64,000 nt of DNA from Pecten maximus (Eukaryota): positions 19,158,001 through 19,222,000 of the forward strand of contig NC_047023.1 in the NCBI RefSeq assembly GCF_902652985.1, written 5' to 3'. The notes beneath the pieces were generated by a model. It made no database searches. It saw only the letters and a list, made by a program, of their open reading frames with translations, and was not told the origin of the DNA. The translations under genes were made by a program, and so were the position numbers. Shown here piece by piece: positions 5,225-64,000 of the stretch (the first letter of the stretch is position 1; the number at the start of each line of letters is the position of its first letter).

Positions 5225-8200
5225 GGTATATCTATACTAGGGGAAACCTGTAAAGGTATGTCTTTACTAGGGGAAACTTGTAAAGGTATGTCTTACTAGG
5301 GGAAACTTGTAAATGTATGTTTATACTAGGGGAAACTTGTAAAGGTGTGTCTATACTAGGGGACACTTGTAAAGGTATGTCTATACTAGGGGACACTTGT
5401 AAAGGTATGTCTATACTAGGGGAAACTTGTAAAGGTATGTCTATACTAGGGGACACTTGTAAAGGTATGTCTATACTTGGGGGAACCTGTAAAGGTATGT
5501 CTATACTAGGGGAAACTTGTAAAGGTATGTCTATACTAGGGGAAACCTGTAAAGGTACATTGTATGTCTATACTAGGGGAAACTTGTAAAGGTATGTCTA
5601 TACTAGGGGAAACTTGTAAATGTATGTCTATACTAGGAGAAACTTGTAAAGGTATGTCTATTCTAGGGGGAACATGTAAAGGTATGTCTATACTAGGGGG
5701 AACATGTAAAGGTATGTCTTTACTAAGGGAAACTTGTAAAGGTATGTCTATACTAGGGGAAACTTGTAAAGGTGTGTCTATACTAGGGGAAACCTGAAAA
5801 GGTATGTCTATACTAGGGGAAACTTGTAAAGGTAAGTCTATACTAGGGGAAACTTGTAAAGGTATGTCTATACTAGGGGAAACTTGTAAAGGTGTGTCTA
5901 TACTAGGGGAAACCTGAAAAGGTATGTCTATACTAGGGGAAACTTGTAAAGGTAAGTCTATACTAGGGGAAACTTGTAAAGGTGTGTCTATACTAGGGGA
6001 AACTTGTAAAGGTACATTGTATGTCTATACTAGGGGAAACTTGTAAAGGTATGTCTATACTAGGGGAAACTTGTAAAGGTACATTGTATGTCTATACTAG
6101 GGGAAACTTGTAAAGGTATGTCTATACTAGGGGAAACTTGTAAAGGTATGTCTATACTAGGGGAAACTTGTAAAGGTATGTCTATACTAGGGGAAACTTG
6201 TAAAGGTATGTCTATACTAGGGGAAACTTGTAAAGGTATGTCTATACTAGTTGGAACATGTAAAGGTATGTCTTAACTAGGGGGAACATGTAAAGGTATG
6301 TCTATACAAGGGGAAACTTGTGAAGGTGTGTCTATTCTAGGGGAAACTTGTTAAGATATGTCTATACTAGGGGAACCTGTAAAGGTATGTCTATACTAGG
6401 GGAAACCTGAAAAGGTACATTGTATGTCTATACTAGGGGAAACTTGTAAAGGTATGTCTATACTAGGAGAAACTTGTAAAGGTATGTCTATACTAGGGGA
6501 AACTTGTAAAGGTATGTCTATATTAGGGGAAACTTGTAAAGGTATGTCTATACTAGGGGAAACTTGTAAAGGTATGTCTATACTAGTTGGAACATGTAAA
6601 GGTATGTCTTAACTAGGGGGAACATGTAAAGGTATGTCTATACTAGGGGAAACTTGTAAAGGTATGTCTATACTAGGGGAAACCTGACAAGGTATGTCTA
6701 TACTAGGGGAAACTTGTAAAGGTATGTCTATACTAGGGGAAACTTGTAAAGGTAGGTCTATACTAGGGGGGACATGTAAAGGTATGTCTATACTAGGGGA
6801 AACTTGTAAAGGTGTGTCTATACTAGGGGAAACTTGTAAAGGTATGTCTATACTAGGGGAAACTTGTAAAGGTGTGTCTATACTAGGGGAAACTTGTAAA
6901 GGTATGTCTATACTAGGGGGAACCTGTAAAGGTATGTCTATACTAGGGGAAACCTGTACAGGTATGTCTATACTAGGGGAAACTTGTAAAGGTATGTCTA
7001 TACTAGGGGAAACCTGTAAAGGTACATTGTATGTCTATACTAGGGGAAACTTGTAAATGTATGTCTATACTAGGGGAAACTTGTAAAGGTATGTCTATAC
7101 TAGGGGAAACTTGTAAAGGTATGTCTATACTAGGGGAAACATGTAAAGGTATGTCTAACTAAGGGAAACCTGAAAAGGTATGTCTATACTAGGGGAAACT
7201 TGTAAAGGTATGTCTATACTAGGGGAAACTTGTAAAGGTATGTCTATACTAGGGGAAACTTGTAAAGGTATGTCTATACTAGGGGAAACTTGTAAAGGTA
7301 TGTCTATACTAGGGGAAACTTGTAAAGGTATGTCTATACTAGGGGAAACTTGTAAAGGTATGTCTATACTAGGGGAAACATGTAAAGGTATGTCTATACT
7401 AGGGGAACCTGTAAAGGTATGTCTATACTAGGGGAAACTTGTAAAGGTATGTCTATACTAGGGGGAACATGTAAAGGTATGTCTATACTAGGGGAACCTG
7501 TAAAGGTATGTCTATACTAGGGGAAACTTGTAAAGGTATGTCTATACTAGGGGGAACATGTAAAGGTATGTCTATACTAGGGGTAACACGTAAAGGTATG
7601 TCTATACTAGGGAAACTTGTAAAGGTATGTCTATACTAGGGGAAACCTGTAAAGGTATGTCTATACTAGGGGAAACATGTAAAGGTATGTCTATACTAGG
7701 GGAAACTTGTAAAGGTATGTCTATACTAGGGGAAACTTGTACAGGTATGTCTATACTAGGTGGAACATGTAAAGGTATGTCTATACTAGGGGGAACTTGT
7801 AAAGGTATGTCTATACTAGGGAAAACTTGTACAGGTATGTCTATACTAGGGGAAACCTGTAAAGGTGTGTCTAACTAAGGGAATTCTGAAAAGGTATGTC
7901 TATACTAGGGGAAACTTGTAAAGGTATGTCTATACTAGGGGGGACATGTAAAGGTATGTCTAACTAAGGGAAACATGTAAAGGTATGTCTATACTAGGGG
8001 AAACTTGTAAAGGTATGTCTATACTAGGGGGAACCTGTAAAGGTATGTCTATACTAGGGGAAACTTGTAAAGGTATGTCTATACTAGGGAAAACTTGTAC
8101 AGGTATGTCTATACTAGGGGAAACCTGTAAAGGTGTGGCTATACTAGGGGAAACTTGTAAAGGTATGTCTATACTAGGGGAAACTTGTAAAGGTATGTCT

Positions 8201-8962
8201 ATACTAGGGGAACCTGTAAAGGTATGTCTATACTAGGGGAAACTTGTAAAGGTATGTCTATACTAGGGGGGACATGTAAAGGTATGTCTATACTAGGGGA
8301 AACTTGTAAAGGTATGTCTATACTAGGGGAAACTTGTAAAGGTACATTGTATGTCTTACTAGGGGGAACCTGTAAAGGTGTCTCTATACTAGGGGGAACA
8401 TGTAAAGGTGTGTCTATACTAGGGGAAACTTGTAAAGGTATGTCTATACTAGGGGAAACTTGTAAAGGTGTGTCTATACTAGGGGAAACTTGTAAAGGTA
8501 TGTCTATACTAGGGGAAACTTGTAAAGGTATGTCTATACTAGGGGAAACTTGTAAATGTGTGTCTATACTAGGGGGAAACTTGTAAAGGTATGTCTATAC
8601 TAGGGGAAAGTTGTAAAGGGATGTCTATACTAGGGGGAACTTGTAAAGGTATGTTTATATAAGGGGAAACTTGTAAAGGTATGTCTATACTAGGGGAAAG
8701 TTGTAAAGGTATGTCTATACTAGGAGAAACTTGTAAAGGTGTGTCTATACTAGGGGAAACTTGTAAAGGTATGTCTATACTAGGGGAAACTTGTAAAGGT
8801 ATGTCTATACTAGGGGAAAGTTGTAAAGGGATGTCTCTACTAGGGGAAACTTGTAAAGGTATGTTTATATAAGGGGAAACTTGTAAAGGTATGTCTATAC
8901 TAGGGAAACTTGTAAAGGTATGTCTATACTAGGGAAACTTGTAAAGGTATGTCTATACTAGT
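5225..8962. repeat. 30-bp minisatellite (ggtatgtctatactaggggaaacttgtaaa), ~125 copies
   Basis: Direct periodicity; explains all the MSILGETCKG ORFs. Confidence 0.98.
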
Positions 8963-11890: not shown

Positions 11891-12204
11891 TAACAGCAGT
11901 TTTCTGTTATGATTTTAGATACACACAACGTCTGCTGTCTTCCGCTGTAAAGTATCTGTTATAAATTGCATATTATGGTTCACTTTGTCCCACTACATGG
12001 TGATCGAAGAAGGCGACGAAAAGTTCTACAATGTTTTCTTCTAAATGTTCTAAATAGGAGAGAACACCAACGTGAAGTCACTTAAGAAAACAAGTTTCTT
12101 GTTGTCTTTTCGTAGTTGCTTTGTCCTTAACAACCGTCCTCAAATGACCTTGACAGTACATAACATGGACATTGAACCCCATGCAACATACAACATGATC
12201 ATAC

Positions 12205-14060
12205 CAGGATATATGACCATACCGGGACACGACATGACAATACCGGGATACGACATGACCAAACCGGGATACGACATGACCAAACCATGATACGGCATGA
12301 CAATACCGGGATACGACATGACCAAACCGGGACACGACATGACCATACCGGGACACGACATGACCATACCGGGACACGACATGACCATACCGGGACACGA
12401 CATGACCATACCGGGATACGACATGACCATACCTCCCGGGATACGACATCCCCATACCGGGATACGACATGACCATACCGGGACACGACATGAGCATACC
12501 GGGATACGAAATGACCATACCGGGATACGACATGACCATACCGAGATACGACATGACCAAACCGGGATACGACATGACCATACCGGGATACGACATGACC
12601 ATACCGGGATACGACATGACCATACCGGGATACGACATGACCATACCGGGATACGACATGACCATTACGGGATACGACATGACCATATCGGGATACAACA
12701 TGACCATTACGGGATACGACATGACCATACCGGGATACGACATACCCATACCGAGATACGACATGACCATACCGGGATACGACATGACCATTACAGGATA
12801 CGACATGACCATACCGGGAAACGACATACCCATACCGGGATACGACATGACCATACCGGGATACGACATGACCATACCGGGATACGACATGACCATTACG
12901 GGATACGACATGACCATACCGGGATATGACATGACCCTACCGGGATACGACATGACCATACCGGGATACGACATGACCATACCGGGATACGACATGACCA
13001 TACCGGGACACGACATAGCCATACCGGGATACGACATGACCATAACGAGGTACGACATGACCATACCGGGATACGACATGACCATAATGAGGTACGACAT
13101 GACCATACCGGGACACGACATGACCATACCGGGATACGACATGACCATACCGGGACACGACATGGCCATACCGGGATATGACATGACCATACCGGGATAC
13201 GACATGTCCATACCGGGATACGACATGACCATACCGGGATACGACATGACCATACCGGGACACGACATGACCATACAGGGGCACGACATGACTATACCGG
13301 GATACGACATTACCATACCGGGATACGACATGACCATTACGGGATACGACATGACCATACCGGGATATGACATGACCATACCGGGATACGACATGACCAT
13401 ACCGGGATACGATATGACCATACCGGGATACGACATGACCATACCGGGATACGACATGACCATACCGGGATACGGCATGACCATACCGAGATACGACATG
13501 ACCATACCGGGATACGACATGACCATGACCATACCGGGATACGACATGACCATACCGGGATACGATATGACCATACCGGGATACGACATGACCATACTGG
13601 GATACGGCATGACCATACCGAGATACGATATGACCATACCGGGATACGACATGACCATTACGGGATACGACATGACCATACCGGGATATGACATGACCAT
13701 ACCGGGATACGACATGACCATACCGGGATACGATATGACCATACCGGGATACGACATGACCATACCGGGATACGACATGACCATACCGGGATACGGCATG
13801 ACCATACCGAGATACGACATGACCATACCGGGATACGACATGACCATGACCATACCGGGATACGACATGACCATACCGGGATACGATATGACCATACCGG
13901 GATACGACATGACCATACTGGGATACGGCATGACCATACCGAGATACGATATGACCATACCGGGATACGACATGACCATGACCATACCGGGATATGACAT
14001 GACCATATCGGGATACGATATGACCATACCGGGATACGACATGACCATACCGGGAAACAA
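12205..14060. repeat. 21-bp CpG-rich minisatellite (atgaccataccgggatacgac), ~88 copies
   Basis: Direct periodicity; the unit is stop-free in one frame on each strand, which produces the 536-aa and 663-aa ORFs. Confidence 0.98.
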
Positions 14061-14299
14061 CATTGCCATACTATACTAGTGTTTTGCCATAATTTGACGT
14101 AACTATAGTTATTGTAGAAAGGTTTTTAGTGACCTGATATAACGGAAATGATCTCGTGTATTTTGATACTATAGTGTTCGATATTGAAAATCGTCGACAA
14201 TACAATCTGACAGGTCGTTTCCTACAAAGGCTCTAATACCTAAGGGTATCCAATATTTGTCTCGGAAACTTTTTTCTATAAATTTCGCATCAGTATTAA

Positions 14300-16961: not shown

Positions 16962-17234
16962 ATGCAGAAGGCGATCCGCTTCAACGAAAACCAACTACTC
17001 TACCTAGCGTCGAAATCGAGGCGGGAGAATACTATAGCTGGGTATCTTCACAAGAAAAGTTCGGACACTGGGAAATGGCAACTCCGTTATTTCATATTGT
17101 ATCAAAATCTATTGTTTTACTTTGAGAGTGAGACCGCCGGGAGACCGTCTGGTGTCGCCCTGCTGGAAGGTAGCTATTGCGATCGAGTTTTGACTCCGGC
17201 TGCATTGAAGGCCGGGAAGGACACCGAGAAACAG
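16962..17234 (+). CDS. RASGRF1: Ras-specific guanine nucleotide-releasing factor (RasGRF1/2 orthologue), first coding exon, N-terminal PH domain
   Basis: MQKAIRFNE...GYLHKKSSDTGKWQLRYFILYQNLLFYFESETAGRPSGVALLEGSYCDR...EKQ closely matches the RasGRF N-terminus as I recall it (MQKAIRLN...GYLSKRSSD..KWQ.KWF.L.QNLLFYFES....RPSG..LLEG..CDR...EKQ). It ends at a consensus phase-0 donor CAG|GTAAGT (17234/17235) after 91 codons. An invertebrate gene would be co-orthologous to RASGRF1 and RASGRF2. Confidence 0.95.
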
Positions 17235-18611
17235 GTAAGTCACGGTAATTGATTAAAACTATTGGAAATATGATGTGCGTGTTAAAATGCATATCGATCT
17301 GAAATCTAAGTCGGCTACGTTTTATTTCAGAGAATACTGATTTAGAGCACACAATGGCCAGATTTGTTCATGCATAACGAGTGTGTGTGTAGTTCTACAC
17401 GCGACAAATCGAACATTCTCTTGTAGAACGATATCGCGAGTTGTTAGCGCCAAAATGGTCGATTTGGTTTGTAAATATTTTGAGTTTACAATTGTCTACC
17501 GCGGGTTGGTTTCCTGTTTCTAAATGGCGTTCACTGTTAAATGAACAGATTACCGGTGTGTTGTATATCTAGGTATGTGGGTGTTATTCATTGTTTATTA
17601 CGGTGGTCAGTTGCGTAGGTATGAACGATGACCAGACTACTACACATGTGATCGACAACACAAATGAAGACAGACACGTGTGACCTCTGTGACCTTGTTC
17701 TTGTTTACATTTGTGAGAACACATGTTTCAGCTTCTGTATAAAGTGACGCGTGTATGAAAAATGTATATATATATATACACACTGTATATCAACATATCG
17801 TTAGCACATTCCCTCAGGTGATGCTGGGTAAACTAGTTCACCTGTGAAGTTGTAACAGGTGAACATGTGGAGCTGTAAATACCATTAAAAACAAAATGTT
17901 TTGCAGCTAAACACACAAAACCTCATCAGCTTATACTTCAAGTGGAAAACTTAGCTGGTGGCTGGTGCTAGCTCTGCCTGGCAATAGTACATGTATATTC
18001 AGTGTGTTATATAAAACATTTACCAGGTACATCCAGTGATATTTTGGGGTACATTTGGGGCCGAATATAGGCCCCTTTCCCTAGTGAGACTTTGTATTTT
18101 CTCAATTTTGTGTTCATATTTTTCCAATCAGAAATTGTTTAAATGTCTATGTACATCAATTTGTATGAAATATTGATCAGTATTTATTTTAAGCAGATGC
18201 ACTTACAGGTATACTGCTAGTTCATATTCATCAAATGTAAATTAAACATAAAAGATATGTTAATATTGCCCCAATCAGCAAACAATATAACTGTATTTTA
18301 CAAAGGAACAGGCCCCTGTAAAATCCCACTAAGGTACACATATTGACTAGGTCACTGAGGAGGTTATTTCCATTTCATGAATGTTTCTGTTCCTGTCTTA
18401 CTTCCAAAAATCATCTTTAAAGGACGGATATTATCTCCCTAAAGGAAGAAAAACTTTACTGATTGTTATGAAATATTCTACTGTTTGAAATAACCATGAA
18501 TATAATTATATATCTGTGCTGATATATATATAGCAGTTCATCATTATTAAAAATCTGTTCATGGGATGTCTTTATCAAACATCCTTGTACAACCAAATAA
18601 AAACATCACTA

Positions 18612-37287: not shown

Positions 37288-38121
37288 TTGAGATTTGACC
37301 ATATCTTGAATCTAGACTTATTAGTTGTCCTTACAAGGTTGAGATTTGACCATCTTGAATCTAGACTAAAGTTGTACCCATAAGGTTGAGATTTGACCAT
37401 CTTGAATCTAGACTAAAGTTGTACCCATAAGGTTGAGATTTGACCATCTTGAATCTAGACTTATCATTGTACCCATAAGGTTGAGATTTGACCATCTTGA
37501 ATCTAGACTTATCATTGTACCCATAAGGTTGAGATTTGACCATCTTGAATCTAGACTTAAAGTTGTAATCATAAGGTTGAGATTTGACCATCTTGAATCT
37601 GGACTTATAGTTGTACCCATAAGGTTGAGATTTGACCATCTTGAATCTGGACTTATAGTTGTAATCATAAGGTTGAGATTTGACCATCTTGAATCTGGAC
37701 TTATAGTTGTAATCATAAGGTTGAGATTTGACCATCTTGAATCTGGACTTATAGTTGTAATCATAAGGTTGAGATTTGACCATCTTGAATCTAGAACTGT
37801 AGTTGTACTTATAAGGTTGAGATTTGACCATCTTGAATCTGGACTTATCATTGTACCCATAAGGTTGAGATTTGACCATCTTGAATCTAGACTTATCATT
37901 GTACCCACAAGGTTGAGATTTGACCATCTTGAATCTGGACTTATATATAGTTGTAATCATAAGGTTGAGATTTGACCATCTTGAATCTAGAACTGTAGTT
38001 GTACCCATAAGGTTGAGATTTGACCATCTTGAATCTGGACTTATATATAGTGGTACCCATAAGGTTGAGATTTGACCATCTTGAATCTAGACTTAGAGTT
38101 GTACCCATAAGGTTGAGATTT
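37288..38121. repeat. 48-bp minisatellite (taaggttgagatttgaccatcttgaatctrgacttatagttgtaccca), ~17 copies
   Basis: Period 47-48; the overlapping ORFs show 16-aa periodicity. Confidence 0.97.
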
Positions 38122-46831: not shown

Positions 46832-47811
46832 AAATATCTGCTTTAACTTGGTGTTGCTTACCTGTCCAAGCAAGAAAGGACATTGTGTTCTGTCTCCTCT
46901 TCTCTTCTGACTCCTGACCAAGATATATTTACTAATATCCCAAGAAATTAGTATTGCTGTGATCTTCTTTACATGCAGAACGATAAGCTCTTACGCTTTT
47001 ACTATACCTCCTACTTAAGAAGTACCCAGATAATTCTTACATCTTTATAGCATAACCTAACCCTCACACATACATGTACATATATATGATATATTAAATC
47101 GAGCCTGAGGATGAGGATTTTGTGGTGATGTAGCTAGGTTATATCTTCATATCCTTCCTTTGGGGGCGTAATTGCTGAAATAAACAACTTTTAATAGGGT
47201 TTTTACAGTGAATATTGATAGTATTTTGCTTTCCTTGGTTTGTATAAAGTTTTCATCACCATAAGATTTTTAGCGATTTTGTTGTCAAATATCATACCAG
47301 TACCTTAGAATCTACTGACATACGTACGTGCCAGTGGTTAATAAATGTTCATCCGTTTTAGTTGGAGTAGGTTGTTGGTTGATTCCCGCACTTCAGGTAT
47401 CTCGCGTATTTTATGAGGGACTCTGCTTTTTTCCTTATTTTGTTGGGAATATCCATGGAAAAGATATGGACAAAATATGGAAAATGGATTTTGCATTTTT
47501 ATGAGAATATATGGAAAAAATGTGGAGAAAATGTGGAGAAAAAGTGGAAAAACTGACTCGTTCAAATTCCTTGTGGAACGTAATTGGACTCAGTAAAATT
47601 TACTAGAATCAAAATACAGAGTCAGGAGTTAGAATATTGGCTATTGTCTTCCTTAAATGGGTTTGGGTCATTATGGAGGAAATTGGTTGTACTTGGTTAG
47701 GGTCTGTGTGAACATGCTCCCTGCATGATCCTACCATTTACATGATACTTAGCATTGTTCAAATTAAACCAAGCCCCTATAAACTATGAACATATAGAAC
47801 ATTCACCTTGA

Positions 47812-48785
47812 ACCTGTAATAAACCAGACTCTGTACAAACCAGACCCTGTATAAACCAGACCCTGCATAAACCAGACCCTGTATAAACCAGACCCTGTAT
47901 AAACCAGACCCTAAACCAGACACTGTATAAACCAGACACTGTATAAACCAGACCCTGTATAAACCAGACCCTAAACCAGACACTGTATAAACCAGACACT
48001 GTATAAACCAGACCCTGTATAAACCAGACACCTGTATAAACCAGACCCTGTATAAACCAGACCCTGTATAAACCAGACCCTGTATAAACCAGACCCCGTA
48101 TAAACCAGACACCTGTATAAACCAGACCCTGTATAAACCAGACCCTGTATAAACCAGACCCTAAAGCAGACACTGTAATAAATCAGTCCCTGTATAAACC
48201 AGACCCTGCATAAACCAGACCCTGTATAAACCAGACCCTGTATAAACCAGACCCTAAACCAGACACTGTATAAACCGGACACTGTATAAACCAGACCCTG
48301 TATAAACCAGACCCTGTATAAACCAGACCCTGTATAAACCAGACCCTGTATAAACCAGACCCCGTATAAACCAGACCCCGTATAAACCAGACACCTGTAT
48401 AAACCAGACACCTGTATAAACCAGACACCTGTATAAATCAGACCCTGTATAAACCAGACCCTGTATAAACCAGACACCTGTATAAACCAGACCCTGTATA
48501 AACCAGACACCTGTATAAACCAGACCCTGTATAAACCAGACCCTGTATATACCAGACCCTGTATAAACCAGACCCCGTATAAACCAGACCCCGTATAAAT
48601 CAGACCCCGTATAAACCAGACACTGTATAAACCAGACACTGTATAGACCAGACCCTGTATAAACCAGTCACCTGTATAAACCTGATGCCCTGTATAAACC
48701 AGACCCTGTATAAACCAGACCCTGTATAAACCAGACCCTGTATAAACCTGATGCCCTGTATAAAGGAGACCCTGTATAAACCGGA
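47812..48785. repeat. 16-bp minisatellite (tataaaccagaccctg), ~60 copies
   Basis: Period 16 measured at 48301/48317. Confidence 0.97.
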
Positions 48786-58413: not shown

Positions 58414-58485
58414 CATACTTGCCAACTTTCCCGATTTAGTCGGGAATTTCCCGATTCCAGACTCCCTGCCCCGTCTCCCGATCGT
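58414..58485 (+). mobile_element. Probable left terminus of a hAT-like element (catacttgccaactttcccg...)
   Basis: Terminus-like motif followed by repeated tcccga/tcggga subterminal motifs; no partner end found in the window. Confidence 0.4.
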
Positions 58486-58857
58486 ATAGATAAAACATAG
58501 TGCCGATTTTGGAGAATATGTCTTGATAACCCCGTATGGAGCCCCTATTCATCTTGTTAGATTCACTAAGGCCTATGACAGGTAACGCTTGCTGGCTGGT
58601 GAAAGACATATGTGTGGGGCATTGGTCAGTTAATATAACTGACCTGCTCACAGACCGTAACGAAATTCTGACACTTCACTGACTGCAAGGGTGACAATAC
58701 CCCGATAAATAAACAATTAATTAAAACTAATTAAGCTGAGGACGCGTGGTGATGGTTTTGTAGCAGGTCAGTCATGGTTGATTGAACGCTTGTAAATGGC
58801 TTCGTATACTGCCTTTGATGTCAAGCGCATAAACGACCTCTACTTGACAGTATATCT

Positions 58858-59317
58858 GGCCTCAGACCACAATTAATTTCCCTCTATGTTATACCAAAGA
58901 AAAATAAAAATAAAAATATTTCAAAACATTGCAAAAAATCTAGTTTTCATATATGTTGTAGAACTGTTCAATCTGAATCTGCAGTGAGCTGGAAAGTACC
59001 TCATGACCGGCATTTAAGAAAGATATTTTTATTTAAATGCCACCACCCCTCTATATTATGGGAAAATCCGGAAAATTACAAAATATCACTACTCAAACCT
59101 TATAACTCCCTGTGTCCTTCCTCACAAACAAACATGCAAATGGTGTCAAAACAAAATTCTCCCACTAGAATAGATATTGCACTACAAATATATGTTAAAA
59201 TTATGAACATATCTGTAATAGCTAAGTCAGGAAAAAATATTTAGTAACATACCTGAAATTTACTTATGTACTACATTCGTGTACAACGACCCGGAAGTGT
59301 AACTGTGGTCTGAGGCC
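58858..59317 (+). repeat. Left long terminal direct repeat (460 bp) with its own TIRs
   Basis: Starts ggcctcagaccacaatta and ends taactgtggtctgaggcc (14-bp perfect, 17/18 inverted match). Confidence 0.97.
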
Positions 59318-60033
59318 TGTATATATGTATTTTTTAGAGATACAATTTTCTGGTTATATCACCACATTTGGCATACAATAACACATGTTATTGCAAATTA
59401 TTGTGAAATTTACTTCATAAATGAAAAAGTTATATCATTTTCAGTTACCCTACCCCCATCCTCTGTAAAACTCTACTCTGCCAATGAGACTTCTGAGAGA
59501 CCCAATATGTAAATGGCTAATTGGGCCATCAATATTCAAGTAATATATCAACATCATATATCAAATTAAAGCTTATTCAATACTTTTCTGAAATTTATAT
59601 GTTGTTTTTCAATTTTCACAAAAATGAACTTTATAAGGAATTTTTAATAATCCATGTAAAAAAATACACTTTTCAACACAATTTTTTTCAGTAAAAATGA
59701 AACAGTTTTTTTTTCAAAAATCACAGCCTGTCTAACTTTATACCACTGTATACAGGAAGTTTCCCCCTATAAAATGAGTGTAATTGAAACTTTATAGCCC
59801 AATTAATTAATTAGTAAACACATGACAAACACACCCAGGTAGGCAGGTGCCCTCTCTTCATTGGTCAGCACCAGGGGGATTTGGGTATGAGATATCCCCT
59901 TCCTGTGGGCTTGTAATCCTTATTAAGTGGTGTATATATTTAGACCATATGTGTTTTATGTAAGTTCAGGTAAAATAAAGGGTTTTGGATATATAGGGGT
60001 CAATTTTAGAGGGATATTTGGCCTGACAGCACC

Positions 60034-62058
60034 ATGAAAGGGAGGAAGAAAAGACTAAAATCTGCTTTCCAGTATGGTAACACACCACATAATAAGGGTA
60101 AAACAACTGCAGGACATGGGGTAAGTAAGGTTTTAACTAAAAACGAATCAGGCACCTGGAAACGATTGAGTCCCAATGTCTTTTCTTTAGTTACAGTAAC
60201 GCGCCCTGGTAGCAACTTTCCCAGCACTTCTGACACCGAAGGTAACCCTGGTAATGTGAAACTCCTTAGGCCCAGAAAAACCAAAGCGACTGATCTAGAG
60301 GCTTTAGACCTACATGAAAACATGAATAAAAAGCCTAGATTACAAACTCGTATCAGAAATCAGGGTAATCGATTAATAAATACAGAGAAAATTGGAGACC
60401 TCATGCAAATTATCTCCTCACACAGGTGTGACAACCCAGATGTTGATATTTACAATGAGATCAAAATAGGAGTAACATGTAAATTTCAAGTCTCATGTAA
60501 AACATGTGGTTGGGTGTCTGATACACATAAGATGTACAATGAAGTTCAATCCCCAAAAAGGGGACCAAACCCTGCAGTACCAAATCTGACAATGCACGCT
60601 GGCCTCCAAGAAACACCTATGGGGCCAGCAGGTGCACGGCGTTTGTTTAATTCAATGAACTTGGTTCCCCCCTGCCGTAGTGGTATGCAGAGAAATGCTA
60701 ATATGGTGGGAGAGAAAATAATATCACTAAATAAAGAGGATATGGCTAATAAAGCAAAAGAGGTAAGGGAGATATGCGAGTTGAGGGGAGACCCCAACAT
60801 GGTTAACGTACAAGTTGACGGAAGATATAATAGGTCAACAATAACCTTCCGTAACAAGCCTGGTACAAGTGCTGTACAATTAGCACTAATAGCGCGTGAG
60901 GACATTACAGACAAAAATTATATCTTGGGAATAGCCGTCCAATCACAGATATGCTGGAAGGGTAAATGGTTACGGCTCAAAGGGTTTGATGCTAAATGTC
61001 CTGGTGGCCACATTGACTGTAGTGCTACAATAGGGGAGGGGACACCGCTATCCGAGTTCGAAGCTGCTAAGCTTGTGGGTGAGCAATTGTACCAACAGGA
61101 TCTTATTGTACGGTACGCAACATCTGATGGAGACGCGAGATCTGTCGCAGGTCTAGATGCGGCATATAAAAACTTTATACCCATGTGGAAAGTCCAACGT
61201 CTAGCTGATCCCACCCATTTAGGACAAGCTCAATTTAGAAAATGTATACGAGCACATTTCAGCTCAGACATGTTCCCCGGAATGAGCACTAGAGAGGGAA
61301 AAACTGAATCACAAAAAGTTCTGAGCAGGGACATAAAAGCTCGATGTAGTTTGATTTGTAAAGAGCTCACAAAAGATTGTACCGGGGAAACCAAAATTAT
61401 GCGTGAAAAACTACCCCATGTGCTAGATGCTACCCTCAGGTGCTACAGTGGGGATTGTTCCCGGTGCAAAAGATACTCCTATGTGTGCAATGGTGGAGTT
61501 GGTAGTGGTACTTGGTGGAACAGGTCCATATTCCTGTCTAAACATAAACTATTTAGCTTGAACCTAGATGAAAATGACAAACAGCTATTGCTCGAGATAC
61601 TGAAAATGAAATTAACAGATGAATGTATCACAGGAATGTCTCTTGGAGCAAATACCCAAAGATGCGAGGCTTTTTTCAGGCTGCTTAACAGCCGCTTACC
61701 AAAAAATGTGCTATATAGCAAGAATATGAATGCACGATTCAATGGAGCTGTCCACACAGCAAATAATGGGGTGGGAAATTCCCTCATGAAAAAAATGGAG
61801 TGCCTCGGTGCAGCAGTAGCACCTGAAGTGAGGCGCTCTCTGCGACAAATGCAGTCAGAGCAAAATTACCACCAAGAGTACCAAAAAACCCCAGCTTTTA
61901 AGAAAAGGACTCTAGAACTGAAAGCAGAAGCTATTCAGAGGCACATTAAAAATAAGGGAGCTAGATCTGATTATAAAAAGGGACAGCTTGACACATATCC
62001 TGACCTCAGCACCAGTAGACTGAGCTCCAACAATGATGAACACAACTATCACAAATAG
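60034..62058 (+). CDS. DDD/E transposase, Kolobok/Mutator-like fold, 674 aa
   Basis: Uninterrupted non-repetitive ORF. Basic NLS-like N-terminus, Zn-ligand-like HRC...CKTC, candidate catalytic D262 (VQVDGRY), D365 (TSDGD) and E545 (NTQRCE), with DPTH (392-395) in the C/DxxH position. Catalytic assignments are by motif inference. Confidence 0.9.
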   Translation: MKGRKKRLKSAFQYGNTPHNKGKTTAGHGVSKVLTKNESGTWKRLSPNVFSLVTVTRPGSNFPSTSDTEGNPGNVKLLRPRKTKATDLEALDLHENMNKKPRLQTRIRNQGNRLINTEKIGDLMQIISSHRCDNPDVDIYNEIKIGVTCKFQVSCKTCGWVSDTHKMYNEVQSPKRGPNPAVPNLTMHAGLQETPMGPAGARRLFNSMNLVPPCRSGMQRNANMVGEKIISLNKEDMANKAKEVREICELRGDPNMVNVQVDGRYNRSTITFRNKPGTSAVQLALIAREDITDKNYILGIAVQSQICWKGKWLRLKGFDAKCPGGHIDCSATIGEGTPLSEFEAAKLVGEQLYQQDLIVRYATSDGDARSVAGLDAAYKNFIPMWKVQRLADPTHLGQAQFRKCIRAHFSSDMFPGMSTREGKTESQKVLSRDIKARCSLICKELTKDCTGETKIMREKLPHVLDATLRCYSGDCSRCKRYSYVCNGGVGSGTWWNRSIFLSKHKLFSLNLDENDKQLLLEILKMKLTDECITGMSLGANTQRCEAFFRLLNSRLPKNVLYSKNMNARFNGAVHTANNGVGNSLMKKMECLGAAVAPEVRRSLRQMQSEQNYHQEYQKTPAFKKRTLELKAEAIQRHIKNKGARSDYKKGQLDTYPDLSTSRLSSNNDEHNYHK

Positions 62059-62107
62059 TTATATATAAATATATATGTGTGTACATAAAATGAAATCATC
62101 AAAAACA

Positions 62108-62626
62108 TTAAAAAAAACCAAAATAAAACAAAAACAAAACAAAAACCAATAGAAATAACCATGATTGAGATGTATGAGATGAGCCGAGCTTGAGCCGTGC
62201 TCTGTGCAAAATGTACATAAAATGTTGATGCATATATTTCAGATAATGTACCTGTATATATTCTAATAAACAATCTGGATATTCCCCATGTCCTGTGCAA
62301 TTATTACAGTTTTTACAATGAATTCTGTTGTTGTTAATAACATGTGGCTCCAAACTGATATGGTCAACAGTTGTGCATAAATTATTATGACACAGGTGTG
62401 ATGCATCAAAGTGTGCAGGTAATTCTAAAACTTCCTTATCCAGCATAACACAGAAACGGTGTGCGGTAACCGTTTTCCAGACACCTGTGTCCGGGTGCCG
62501 GTATCTTACAATGCCATATTTTTTGTTGTTAGACAGTGGTCCCATCCATACCCTGCACCTGCTGTTCGCAGAAATCACAGATTTCTGGGTTACCATTTCC
62601 CTATATTTCACAAGAAAATTTTCCAT
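62108..62626 (-). CDS. His-Me finger (His-Cys box, I-PpoI-like) endonuclease; conserved domain is aa 1-~120 and the C-terminal tail may be spliced out
   Basis: CRVWMG...YG...AHR...DASHLCHNNLCTTVDHISLEPHVINNNRIHC...C.GH...PDCL. H77, C79, C84, H89, E93, N98, R101 and C104 keep the same gapless spacing as I-PpoI H98, C100, C105, H110, E114, N119, R122 and C125 (I-PpoI numbering from memory). Confidence 0.9.
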   Translation of the reverse strand: MENFLVKYREMVTQKSVISANSRCRVWMGPLSNNKKYGIVRYRHPDTGVWKTVTAHRFCVMLDKEVLELPAHFDASHLCHNNLCTTVDHISLEPHVINNNRIHCKNCNNCTGHGEYPDCLLEYIQVHYLKYMHQHFMYILHRARLKLGSSHTSQSWLFLLVFVLFLFYFGFF

Positions 62627-62927
62627 TTTCCTGTATCTAATTAAATTTTAGATGTTCATGAAAGTGAAAGTACGTATACTGAAGTAAACATGTGCTTTGC
62701 TGACAACCCGGCTCAATATATAAGACTTTATCAAATTTTAACATGAAATTTTGCTAAAATCATAGAAAAAGTGATGTAATAAGACAAATAAAATATAAAT
62801 TCATTCATAATTTACACTGACACCTAGTACAAACCTTCAACTTCAATATCCCAGCCTGTCAAATGTCTACTTCAAATGTGCCGACTACAGCGGAAGTTTT
62901 AGACGGGGTATAACTCTAGCCTATGCA

Positions 62928-63387
62928 GGCCTCAGACCACAATTAATTTCCCTCTATGTTATACCAAAGAAAAATAAAAATAAAAATATTTCAAAACATT
63001 GCAAAAAATCTAGTTTTCATATATGTTGTAGAACTGTTCAATCTGAATCTGCAGTGAGCTGGAAAGTACCTCATGACCGGCATTTAAGAAAGATATTTTT
63101 ATTTAAATGCCACCACCCCTCTATATTATGGGAAAATCCGGAAAATTACAAAATATCACTACTCAAACCTTATAACTCCCTGTGTCCTTCCTCACAAACA
63201 AACATGCAAATGGTGTCAAAACAAAATTCTCCCACTAGAATAGATATTGCACTACAAATATATGTTAAAATTATGAACATATCTGCAATAGCTAAGTCAG
63301 GAAAAAATATTTAGTAACATACCTGAAATTTACTTATGTACTACATTCGTGTACAACGACCCGGAAGTGTAACTGTGGTCTGAGGCC
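62928..63387 (+). repeat. Right long terminal direct repeat (460 bp) with its own TIRs
   Basis: Identical to 58858-59317 by eye except T59216 versus C63286. Confidence 0.97.
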
Positions 63388-64000
63388 ATCTCGGACAGAA
63401 AAAGTGAAAACAACACTGGCAATGTTATCAACGGAGTATCAAATTTGACAGATTACTTATTGAAATGTTATCTACATTTAAACATTGGCTGATCTTTAGA
63501 TAATTAGCACAAGGAAATAAATTCACAATAACGACCATACAGACCGAAGGCCTGGTTGCCGGTAGGTAACGTCGTTTCAATCACCGTAGCATCACCATAC
63601 TTCGTGTCAATTAACAGAGACTTATTTTGGCAGAAACTTTCCCAATTCACATTTTGAAAGACAGAAACATGTCCACAAATACTCACTTTCTTCAGAGACA
63701 TATATCTCTGCTTTCTTAAACTAAATACTGTCATGTTAAAACTTTGAATTTGATTGTGTTCAACCATGCATGCATCTGCAAAATGCTCACTTCATCTGTG
63801 GTATTCCCTTTTTCTCCCATCTGTGCAATACAGAGAGAATCTAGTCTCGTCCTTGGGAACATCTCATGTCCCCATGGACACGAACCGAACCTATTCGAGC
63901 TGTATGTCGATGCATCCAATCAAGACGCACTTGCATCTATAAGGTGGCCTAACATTAGGACAGTTGTCTCGGCATGCAAGTGATTCCTGGCAGTTTATTA

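What the first reader, a model, noticed from the sequence alone, without database searches (positions are those of the whole stretch)
58858..63387. Intact composite-like eukaryotic DNA transposon pairing a DDE transposase with a homing-endonuclease-type nuclease between two self-contained 460-bp direct repeats
Seen in sequence: ATCT | 460-bp repeat | 3610-bp internal region | 460-bp repeat | ATCT. Each repeat has its own TIRs (ggcctcagaccaca...tgtggtctgaggcc), so each looks like a MITE and the whole resembles a bacterial composite transposon or an LTR element without RT. The internal region holds a 674-aa transposase (+) and a convergent His-Cys box nuclease (-). The TSD surrounds the whole unit, not either repeat alone, so it moved as one piece. 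Established, from memory: this is the KolobokP architecture (Kojima and Bao 2022, Mobile DNA; bivalve-rich, LTDRs ~450 or ~660 bp). The system class is therefore probably described; this family or host may not be, and the mechanism is, to my knowledge, untested. It lies in what appears to be a RasGRF intron.
Basis: partly seen in the sequence, partly recalled or inferred. Interest (0 to 1): 0.92.

Follow-up and report, generated by a model that had tools for sequence, protein, structure and literature searches.

The report
Known KolobokP transposon copy in scallop
This is an intact copy of KolobokP-1_PeMa, a composite-like DNA transposon of the great scallop that Kojima and Bao listed at exactly these coordinates in 2022, so the structure is real but not new.

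Summary
Two 460-bp direct repeats (LTDRs, 459/460 identical), each with its own 18-bp inverted ends, flank a 3610-bp internal region (INT). A 4-bp duplication (ATCT) brackets the whole 4530-bp unit. INT carries an intact 674-aa DDE transposase (+) and a convergent I-PpoI-like His-Me nuclease (-).

The interpretation as KolobokP is supported, but the element is already described. The genome matches Pecten maximus xPecMax1.1. Kojima and Bao 2022 (PMC9587614) name the family KolobokP-1_PeMa, and their Data S2 lists this very copy (LR736846.1:19216858-19221387).

New here:
- All five genomic copies are 99.7-99.9% alike, keep the transposase frame, and have their own 4-bp duplications.
- At least 12 paralogous empty sites in a host repeat show that the unit inserted as one piece.
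- dN/dS is about 0.1 for the transposase and 0.18 for the nuclease core.
- Two copies carry a private substitution in both LTDRs, so the pair evolves in concert.
- A related non-autonomous family, absent from the paper's scallop lists, forms arrays of nine or more units.

How the nuclease acts remains untested. Interest is low.

The parts
58854..58857 (.). Left copy of the 4-bp target-site duplication, ATCT
   Evidence: In at least 12 paralogous copies of the host repeat the two flanks abut and share exactly 4 bases.
58858..59317 (+). Left long terminal direct repeat (LTDR), 460 bp, with its own inverted ends at 58858-58875 and 59300-59317; termini GG...CC
   Evidence: Listed as KolobokP-1_PeMa-LTDR at LR736846.1:19216858-19217317. 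Its 86-aa ORF (58984-59244) has no Pfam family and is broken by stops in related LTDRs, so the LTDR is non-coding.
58998..59041 (.). Best-conserved internal LTDR block, containing an imperfect palindrome (GGCATTTAA ... TTAAATGCC)
   Evidence: I1; positions 58998-59037 are 90-100% identical to the Mizuhopecten LTDR, against 79% for the LTDR overall. Its function is unknown.
59318..62927 (+). Internal region (INT), 3610 bp. It starts TGTATATATGT and ends CTATGCA. These ends extend the LTDR inverted repeat to 24 nt with 2 mismatches in all
   Evidence: (I2). Listed as KolobokP-1_PeMa-I. The same INT ends occur in the unrelated INT of the non-autonomous family and in related elements of other samples.
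60034..62058 (+). Intact, intron-less 674-aa DDE transposase. Motifs: D262, D365/D367, E545; CCHC finger C307-C322-H326-C329; DxxH at D392-H395; zinc finger C470-C475-C478-C485; N-terminal H130-C132-C155-C158
   Evidence: PF20700, E 1.3e-57. These residues are invariant in 31 homologues. AlphaFold2 model has pLDDT 77.8 with an RNase H-like strand/helix order. Best fold matches are the ISCth4 (IS256), P element and Hermes transposases. dN/dS is 0.09-0.11. The ORF is intact in all 5 copies.
62261..62626 (-). Conserved core (aa 1-122) of the I-PpoI-like His-Me (His-Cys box) nuclease
   Evidence: PF05551, E 5.5e-8. A family profile hits I-PpoI chains as the best PDB matches, E 4e-5, aligning the SHLCHN...C...H...E...N...C region. 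Invariant residues are C24, S76, H77, C79, C84, H89, E93, N98, C104, C110, H113, C119. dN/dS is 0.18.
62108..62260 (-). Unconstrained C-terminal tail of the nuclease ORF in this copy
   Evidence: Homologues stop after about 118-128 aa. The tail length differs between copies because of an indel at 62117-62118. Tail dN/dS is 0.78.
62800..62927 (.). Strongly conserved non-coding block at the right end of INT, upstream of the nuclease gene
   Evidence: Positions 62801-62897 are 81-90% identical to three related pectinid elements, against 47-60% for the neighbouring 62627-62800. Whether it is a promoter or a cis-acting site was not determined.
62928..63387 (+). Right LTDR, 460 bp, with inverted ends at 62928-62945 and 63370-63387
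   Evidence: Listed at LR736846.1:19220928-19221387.
63388..63391 (.). Right copy of the target-site duplication, ATCT
58414..58853 (.). Left part of the older interspersed repeat into which the element inserted
   Evidence: 235 first-look candidates, and 40 scored copies at 96-97% identity.
63392..63750 (.). Right part of the same host repeat
   Evidence: 193 first-look candidates at 90-97% identity, contiguous with the left part in paralogues.
16962..17252 (+). Context: first coding exon (PH domain) of a RasGRF-like gene. The element lies about 41.6 kb downstream on the same strand
   Evidence: PF00169 PH, E 3.5e-9. RasGEF-domain exons lie on the same strand at C9:19344233 and C9:19349525, 122-128 kb beyond the window end. 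The N-terminal likeness to RasGRF rests on my own knowledge.

Best explanation
The feature is one of five full-length, near-identical and coding-intact copies of KolobokP-1_PeMa. This is an autonomous KolobokP element (Kolobok superfamily of DDE DNA transposons) of the scallop Pecten maximus. It inserted as a single 4530-bp LTDR-INT-LTDR unit into an older interspersed repeat, inside a probable RasGRF intron.

Shown:
- The architecture, and the 4-bp duplication around the whole unit.
- The single-piece insertion, from paralogous empty sites.
- The DDE/RNase H-fold transposase with all Kolobok/KolobokP motifs.
- The I-PpoI-like nuclease with a complete catalytic and zinc-ligand set.
- Purifying selection on both genes.
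- Solo LTDRs of this family, and long (LTDR-INT)n arrays of a related non-autonomous family.
- Concerted evolution of the two LTDRs of a copy.

Inferred:
- The transposase binds the conserved GGCCTCAGACCACA ends. When it pairs the two outermost ends it moves the whole composite and makes a staggered 4-bp cut at loosely A-N-N-T targets.
- When it pairs the two ends of one LTDR, it moves that LTDR like a MITE.
- The nuclease does not choose insertion sites. It most likely cuts within the LTDR or at LTDR junctions, so that repair between the direct repeats yields solo LTDRs, multimers and homogenised LTDR pairs. This is the induced unequal-crossover / circle model of Kojima and Bao.
For: - Identity: Table S1 and Data S2 of PMC9587614 list the family and this very copy. 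The genome has 918,306,378 bp in 3983 contigs, and the coordinates of all five copies coincide with those listed.
- Architecture.
- Five copies, each with its own 4-bp TSD: ATCT, AGAT, ACAT, ATAA, ATGT in element orientation.
- At least 12 paralogous empty sites in which the flanks overlap by exactly 4 bases.
- Transposase: PF20700 E 1e-57; invariant D/D/E, CCHC, DxxH and zinc-finger residues; RNase H-like model matching IS256, P element and hAT transposases; dN/dS about 0.1.
- Nuclease: PF05551; I-PpoI is the best PDB match; core dN/dS 0.18.
- Recombination-type products: solo LTDRs at 92-100% identity; arrays with a 2522-bp period of 9 or more units on C184, 7 on C3466 and 6 on C13:30.54 Mb at a ~2.5-kb period.
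- The copies at C10:1.19 Mb and C9:31.47 Mb each carry a copy-private substitution in both LTDRs, at LTDR positions 98 and 391.
- The ends are conserved from scallops to the abalone Haliotis, while the rest of the LTDR is not.
Against: - No step of the mechanism has been tested experimentally, here or in the literature.
- Transcription is shown only weakly: two short contigs in one RNA-labelled run, which could be contaminating DNA.
- Insertion polymorphism could not be shown. The 'empty' joints in reads are most simply paralogues of the host repeat.
- Pfam names the transposase family 'Mutator-like'.
- The autonomous family has no multimers in this assembly.
- The homodimer prediction for the nuclease gave no verdict.
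Confidence: 0.95

Rival explanations
1. A chance composite: two independent insertions of a 460-bp MITE happen to flank a transposase gene, and the unit never moved as one piece.
For: Each LTDR has its own inverted ends, and solo LTDRs exist.
Against: Five copies at unrelated loci have the same LTDR-INT-LTDR structure, each with a different 4-bp duplication outside the outer ends. Paralogous empty sites lack the whole 4530 bp plus one TSD copy. Neither LTDR has a duplication of its own: the inner junctions read TGCA and TGTA.
Confidence: 0.01
2. A Mutator-like (MULE) element, as the Pfam name of the transposase family suggests, rather than Kolobok.
For: PF20700 is named 'Mutator-like transposase'. 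The best fold match is an IS256-family transposase, the prokaryotic relative of MULEs.
Against: The TSD is 4 bp, not the 8-11 bp of MULEs (my own knowledge), and the termini are RR...YY. There is a zinc finger between DxxH and the last E, plus a CCHC finger after the first D; the paper gives these as Kolobok/KolobokP signatures absent from MuDR, P and hAT. The authors' phylogeny places this family in KolobokP. Kolobok, MuDR, P and hAT are sister superfamilies, so the fold matches are expected.
Confidence: 0.03
3. The element is a dead relic. The ORFs are open only because the copies are young, and the nuclease is a passenger without function.
For: The copies differ only by private substitutions, so selection within this family cannot be measured. 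The nuclease ORF has a variable tail. One Mizuhopecten copy has a broken nuclease.
Against: Between families, dN/dS is 0.09-0.11 for the transposase and 0.18 for the nuclease core at dS of about 0.8-1.4. All catalytic and zinc residues are invariant across homologues. The two-gene arrangement is kept in independent contigs from other samples.
Confidence: 0.1

Closest known systems
KolobokP-1_PeMa (Kojima and Bao 2022, Mobile DNA 13:24; PMC9587614)
   Same: Everything matches: host assembly, coordinates, 4529/4530-bp length, 460-bp LTDRs, 18-bp inverted ends, 4-bp TSD and five INT copies.
   Different: Nothing. This copy differs from its four sister copies at seven private sites (six substitutions and one extra base), and the paper scores it 0.998 identical to the consensus.
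KolobokP-1_MiYe and other pectinid KolobokP families
   Same: Same architecture, the same terminal motif, and INT ends of the TGTAT... / ...CTATGCA type. Transposase is 81-84% identical and the nuclease 58-60%.
   Different: Different species or family. The LTDR is 79% identical. The Mizuhopecten copy examined has a satellite array inside its left LTDR and a broken nuclease.
I-PpoI and other His-Cys box homing endonucleases of nuclear group I introns
   Same: Catalytic Ser-His, the Asn, and the Cys/His zinc ligands have the same spacing through the core. I-PpoI is the best solved-structure match.
   Different: This gene is carried by a DNA transposon, not an intron. The protein is shorter (about 122 aa core). 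Its target site and dimer state are unknown (one search gave no verdict).
Bacterial composite transposons (Tn5, Tn10, IS26 pseudo-compound elements)
   Same: Two terminal modules, each with its own inverted ends and each able to move alone, bracket a central segment. The whole unit is flanked by one TSD.
   Different: The modules are non-coding and always in direct orientation. The transposase sits in the centre, and the arrangement is an old, conserved lineage trait rather than an accident.
LTR retrotransposons
   Same: Long direct terminal repeats, solo repeats, tandem arrays sharing a repeat, and near-identical repeat pairs within a copy.
   Different: There is no reverse transcriptase, integrase or primer-binding site. 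The repeats have inverted ends and the enzyme is a DDE transposase of the Kolobok type.

Membership tests
KolobokP | LTDR-INT-LTDR architecture with LTDRs of about 450 or about 660 bp | tested here: met
   LTDRs are 460 bp, 459/460 identical, and INT is 3610 bp.
KolobokP | Each LTDR has its own short inverted ends (11-18 bp), with termini 5'-RR ... YY-3' | tested here: met
   18 nt with 1 mismatch; termini GG ... CC.
KolobokP | TSD of 3-5 bp around the whole unit, without TTAA specificity | tested here: met
   A 4-bp TSD in 5 of 5 full copies and in solo LTDRs. Empty paralogous sites confirm a 4-bp duplication.
KolobokP | DDD/E transposase on the direct strand with a C/DxxH motif, a zinc finger between that motif and the last E, and a CCHC finger after the first D | tested here: met
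   D262, D365/D367, E545; C307-C322-H326-C329; D392-H395; C470-C475-C478-C485. All are invariant in 31 sequences.
KolobokP | RNase H-like catalytic fold | tested here: met
   AlphaFold2 model with pLDDT 77.8. Foldseek top hits are the ISCth4, P element and Hermes transposases, probability 0.99-1.0.
KolobokP | Downstream His-Me finger (His-Cys box) nuclease on the complementary strand | tested here: met
   PF05551 above the cut-off. The profile matches I-PpoI at E 4e-5. The gene is convergent with the transposase.
KolobokP | Solo LTDRs and (LTDR-INT)n multimers occur | tested here: met
   Solo LTDRs of this family were found. Multimers were seen for the related non-autonomous family and for a Haliotis element, but none for the five autonomous copies.
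KolobokP | Placement in the KolobokP clade / identity to a catalogued family | tested here: met
   This copy is listed by coordinates as KolobokP-1_PeMa, 0.998 identical to the consensus. No tree of my own was built.
Classical Kolobok | TTAA-specific 4-bp TSD | tested here: not met
   The TSDs are ATCT, AGAT, ACAT, ATAA, ATGT, AGGT. The paper reports the same for KolobokP.
Mutator-like elements (MULE) | TSD of 8-11 bp and long TIRs (my own knowledge) | tested here: not met
   The TSD is 4 bp and the inverted ends are 18 nt. Only the Pfam family name points to Mutator.
His-Cys box homing endonucleases (I-PpoI group) | Catalytic His and Asn plus two Cys/His zinc sites | tested here: met
   Invariant S76-H77, N98, C24/C79/C84/H89 and C104/C110/H113/C119. 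These are aligned to I-PpoI.
His-Cys box homing endonucleases (I-PpoI group) | Encoded in a group I intron and homing to an intron-less allele | tested here: not met
   The gene sits in a DNA transposon, and its insertion sites show no common long target. Sequence-specific cleavage is not testable with these tools.
Bacterial-type composite transposon | Terminal modules are autonomous insertion sequences that encode the transposase | tested here: not met
   The 86-aa ORF in the LTDR has no family and is broken in related LTDRs. The transposase is in INT.

The most novel reading that the evidence does not exclude
The two LTDRs of a KolobokP copy are not independent passengers of a plain cut-and-paste event. 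Either they are regenerated from one template, or they are quickly homogenised, for example by nuclease-induced repair or by re-integration of a one-LTDR circle. The evidence is that two of the five copies carry a copy-private substitution at the same position in both LTDRs.

In addition, the 7-11 bp INT ends (TGTATATATGT / CTATGCA) are shared by an otherwise unrelated non-autonomous INT. The same motifs flank several 'solo' LTDRs. They may therefore be part of the cis-acting junction that the transposase or the nuclease recognises. Neither point is discussed in the 2022 paper.
Probability: 0.3. Interest if true: 0.45.

Novelty: already known. Interest (0 to 1): 0.15.

Why it matters
As a discovery it does not matter: the class, the family and this very copy are published.

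Its residual value is practical. KolobokP-1_PeMa is a young family with five nearly identical copies, open frames in both genes, and both genes under purifying selection between families. That makes it a good natural candidate for the first experimental test of a question still open in 2026: what a homing-endonuclease-type nuclease does for a eukaryotic cut-and-paste transposon.

The concerted evolution of the LTDR pairs and the array-forming non-autonomous family seen here are the kinds of products that the published unequal-crossover / circle model predicts.

Tried and rejected
- A single-sequence search of the nuclease against PDB found only chance hits. A family profile was needed to reach I-PpoI.
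- The nuclease homodimer prediction (core residues 1-125, two copies) gave no verdict. It counts neither for nor against dimerisation.
- Reads: the joint 58853->63388 (skipping 4534 bases, with 4 shared letters) in three runs first looked like an empty allele. But the flanks belong to a repeat with hundreds of copies, and the joint contigs are deeper than unique sequence. They are most simply paralogues, so I do not claim insertion polymorphism.
- Contigs that end at 60311 with unlike continuation looked like a splice. The genome has no GT there and the continuations differ between runs, so I did not read this as splicing.
- All runs laid were Logan contigs, so no expression level or transcript ends could be read. 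Only two short contigs in one library recorded as RNA match the transposase ORF.
I did not try to obtain those letters another way; only counts of explicit patterns were made.
- I tried to explain the TGCA / TGTA flanks of some solo LTDRs as a longer element with a TSD further out, or as a 2-5-bp TSD reconstructed from satellite periodicity. This gave no single consistent rule.
- blastn found no similarity between the non-autonomous INT and the autonomous INT beyond the terminal bases.

Full report
**Observation.** The repeat finder and a pairwise alignment show two 460-bp direct repeats at 58858-59317 and 62928-63387. They differ at one base. Each repeat begins GGCCTCAGACCACAATTA and ends TAACTGTGGTCTGAGGCC, an 18-nt inverted repeat with one mismatch (I8/I9). 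Between them lie 3610 bp. ATCT stands directly outside both outer ends. The internal region holds a 674-aa ORF on the + strand (60034-62058) and a convergent 172-aa ORF on the - strand (62108-62626).

**Identity.** The window is C9:19158001-19222000 of an assembly of 918,306,378 bp in 3983 contigs.
- Its Table S1 lists KolobokP-1_PeMa from Pecten maximus xPecMax1.1: 4529 bp, LTDR 460 bp, TSD 4 bp, TIR 18 bp, with 17 LTDR and 5 INT copies.
- Its Data S2 lists LR736846.1 19216858-19217317 (LTDR), 19217318-19220927 (I) and 19220928-19221387 (LTDR). These are exactly window positions 58858-63387 in genome coordinates.
- The other four full copies I found (C2:51.98 Mb, C9:31.47 Mb, C10:1.19 Mb, C17:5.98 Mb) are listed there at the same coordinates.
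- So the class, the family and this individual copy are already published.

**One-piece insertion.**
- In element orientation the five copies carry the duplications ATCT, AGAT, ACAT, ATAA and ATGT. Solo LTDRs carry AGGT and ACAT.
- The window copy sits inside an older interspersed repeat, with 235 and 193 first-look candidates for the two flanks.
- In at least 12 paralogues the left-flank match ends exactly 4 bases after the right-flank match begins, for example C1:11231233-11231678 and 11231675-11232012.
- These paralogues serve as empty sites. They show that 4530 bp plus one ATCT were added in a single event.

**Transposase.**
- Pfam PF20700 ('Mutator-like transposase') matches at E 1.3e-57.
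- In an alignment with 30 homologues of 33-84% identity the invariant residues include D262, D365/D367 and E545. They also include a CCHC set after the first D (C307, C322, H326, C329), DxxH (D392, H395) and a four-Cys finger before the last E (C470, C475, C478, C485).
- The paper gives these as the Kolobok/KolobokP signature, absent from MuDR, P and hAT.
- An AlphaFold2 model (pLDDT 77.8, pTM 0.74) has the RNase H-like order of strands and helices around these residues, with an all-helical insertion before E545.
- Foldseek ranks the ISCth4 (IS256 family), P element and Hermes transposases first.
- dN/dS against three related elements is 0.09-0.11 at dS 0.8-1.2.
- The ORF is open in all five copies.

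**Nuclease.**
- Pfam PF05551 matches at E 5.5e-8.
- Homologues are 118-128 aa long and end just after the second zinc site. Only residues 1-122 of the 172-aa ORF are conserved.
- The tail differs in length between copies (172/188/191 aa) because of an indel at 62117-62118. It evolves almost neutrally, with dN/dS 0.78 against 0.18 for the core.
- A profile of the family finds I-PpoI chains as the best solved structures (E 4e-5), aligning the Ser-His, the Cys/His ligands, Glu and Asn.
- A dimer prediction gave no verdict.

**Products of recombination, and relatives.**
- The 14-nt terminal motif occurs 450 times in the genome, against 0 for the control.
- Besides the autonomous family there is a family whose LTDRs are 88-89% identical. 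Its INT of about 2062 bp shares only its first 11 and last 7 bases with the autonomous INT.
- That family forms about 20 chromosomal monomers. It also forms tandem arrays with a 2522-bp period: at least 9 units on C184, 7 on C3466, 5-6 on C1669 and C1742, and 6 on C13:30.54 Mb at a ~2.5-kb period.
- Its coordinates are not among the two P. maximus families listed in the paper. I could not consult Repbase.
- Solo LTDRs of the autonomous family exist (C3:33.92 Mb, C7:24.45 Mb and older ones).
- A Haliotis cracherodii locus found through the transposase is a multimer with 100% identical units. It has the same terminal motif but an otherwise unrelated LTDR.

**Concerted LTDR evolution.**
- The five copies differ at 35 of 4530 columns.
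- The C10 copy has a private G>A at LTDR position 98 in both of its LTDRs. The C9:31.47 Mb copy has a private C>A at position 391 in both.
- The same change arising twice independently is very unlikely. So a change in one LTDR reached the other, either by conversion or crossover, or because both derive from one template.
- The paper does not discuss this. It fits the paper's recombination and circle models.

**Mechanism.** The architecture, the target duplication, the catalytic equipment, the selection and the recombination products are shown. The rest is inferred:
- The transposase pairs either the outermost ends, moving the composite, or the two ends of one LTDR, moving it like a MITE.
- The nuclease plays no part in target choice, because the targets share only a loose A-N-N-T pattern. 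It probably cuts in or beside the LTDR and so drives repair between the direct repeats.
- A 2026 review states that this model still awaits experimental confirmation.

**Reads.** All four runs laid were assembled contigs.
- They show the family in an independent DNA run.
- They also show two short contigs in one RNA-labelled library (60125-60311 and 60966-61126). This is weak evidence of transcription.
- The joints that skip the element are most simply paralogues of the host repeat, so polymorphism remains open.

**Context.** A PH-domain exon with a RasGRF-like N-terminus lies at 16962-17252 (+). RasGEF-domain exons lie on the same strand 122-128 kb beyond the window. The element is therefore probably intronic and in the sense orientation.

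**Verdict.** The novelty class is 'already known', and interest is low. The additions made here are: the integrity and selection of both genes, the reconstruction of the empty site, the concerted LTDR pairs, the array-forming non-autonomous family, and the conserved INT ends and blocks. These are leads for testing the published model, not a new kind of system.

Noticed in passing
G000 C184:8987-29628; C3466:1768-16933; C1669; C1742; C13:30544040-30560647; monomers e.g. C5:47506032-47509017 (L022/L023): A non-autonomous KolobokP family. Its LTDRs are 88-89% identical to KolobokP-1_PeMa. Its ~2062-bp INT is unrelated to the autonomous INT except for the terminal TGTATATATGT / CTATGCA. It occurs as about 20 monomers and as tandem arrays of up to 9 or more units (period 2522 bp). 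It is not among the P. maximus families listed in the 2022 paper.
   Followed up: partly
L004, L011, L014, L021, L024, L029 and the monomer L023/L022 (G000 C3:33921577, C7:24451388, C9:12040474, C16:1430426, C3:5470358, C12:2091913, C5:47506032): Several 'solo' LTDRs and one monomer are flanked by (TA)TGCA on the left and/or TGTA(T) on the right (five of each kind among the fetched loci). These are the same bases as the INT ends, but with no INT beyond and no clean TSD. Several sit inside satellite arrays. Reconstruction from the satellite period gives overlaps of 5-6 bases whose left copy is changed towards TGCA (ATGTA>ATGCA in L021; TGTGTA>TATGCA in L004). Genome-wide, 199 of the 450 exact ends have these flanks. 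This remains unexplained.
   Followed up: partly
window 58955/63025-equivalent and 59248/63318-equivalent positions in L034 (C10:1.19 Mb) and L033 (C9:31.47 Mb): Copy-private substitutions are present in both LTDRs of the same copy, which means the LTDR pair evolves in concert.
   Followed up: partly
window 62800-62927: A non-coding block 81-90% identical between pectinid KolobokP families. It is better conserved than the nuclease gene next to it.
   Followed up: partly
window 59318-60033 and the LTDRs: Non-coding parts are 72-79% identical between the Pecten and Mizuhopecten elements, although dS of the transposase is about 0.95. So the non-coding parts are either constrained or were exchanged more recently than the genes.
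   Followed up: no
window 58414-58857 and 63388-63750: The element sits in an interspersed repeat of roughly 780 bp with hundreds of copies (96-97% identical on the left part, 90-97% on the right). The repeat was not classified.
   Followed up: no
window 58852-58853 / 63388: Contigs of two runs (X4, X6) hold a second element-free form. In it the T at 58853 is replaced by 15 letters (AACAGACACCGTAAT), one base from the target ATCT. It could be a paralogue variant of the host repeat or an excision footprint; this was not resolved.
   Followed up: no
window 59997-60311: In two runs, contigs match this stretch perfectly and then continue with unrelated letters after 60311, different in each run. 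One has much higher depth than the rest of the ORF. There is no GT at 60312. The cause is unknown: a graph artefact, a chimeric transcript or an unassembled rearranged copy.
   Followed up: partly
L062 (Haliotis cracherodii JAJLRC010000004.1:9486735-9496732): An abalone KolobokP multimer: 450-bp LTDRs and a 4062-bp period, with units 100% identical over 3.1 kb. The internal LTDR is flanked by TATCA on both sides. The terminal ~20 nt are identical to those of the scallop element, although the transposases are only 45% identical.
   Followed up: partly
L061 594-3089 (Mizuhopecten yessoensis NEDP02004568.1): The left LTDR of this scallop element is split by a 145-bp satellite array of about 15 or more units.
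   Followed up: no
window 6694-8586, 12078-14079, 37361-38008, 47777-48639: Long ORFs made only of short tandem repeats (minisatellites). They are not genes.
   Followed up: no
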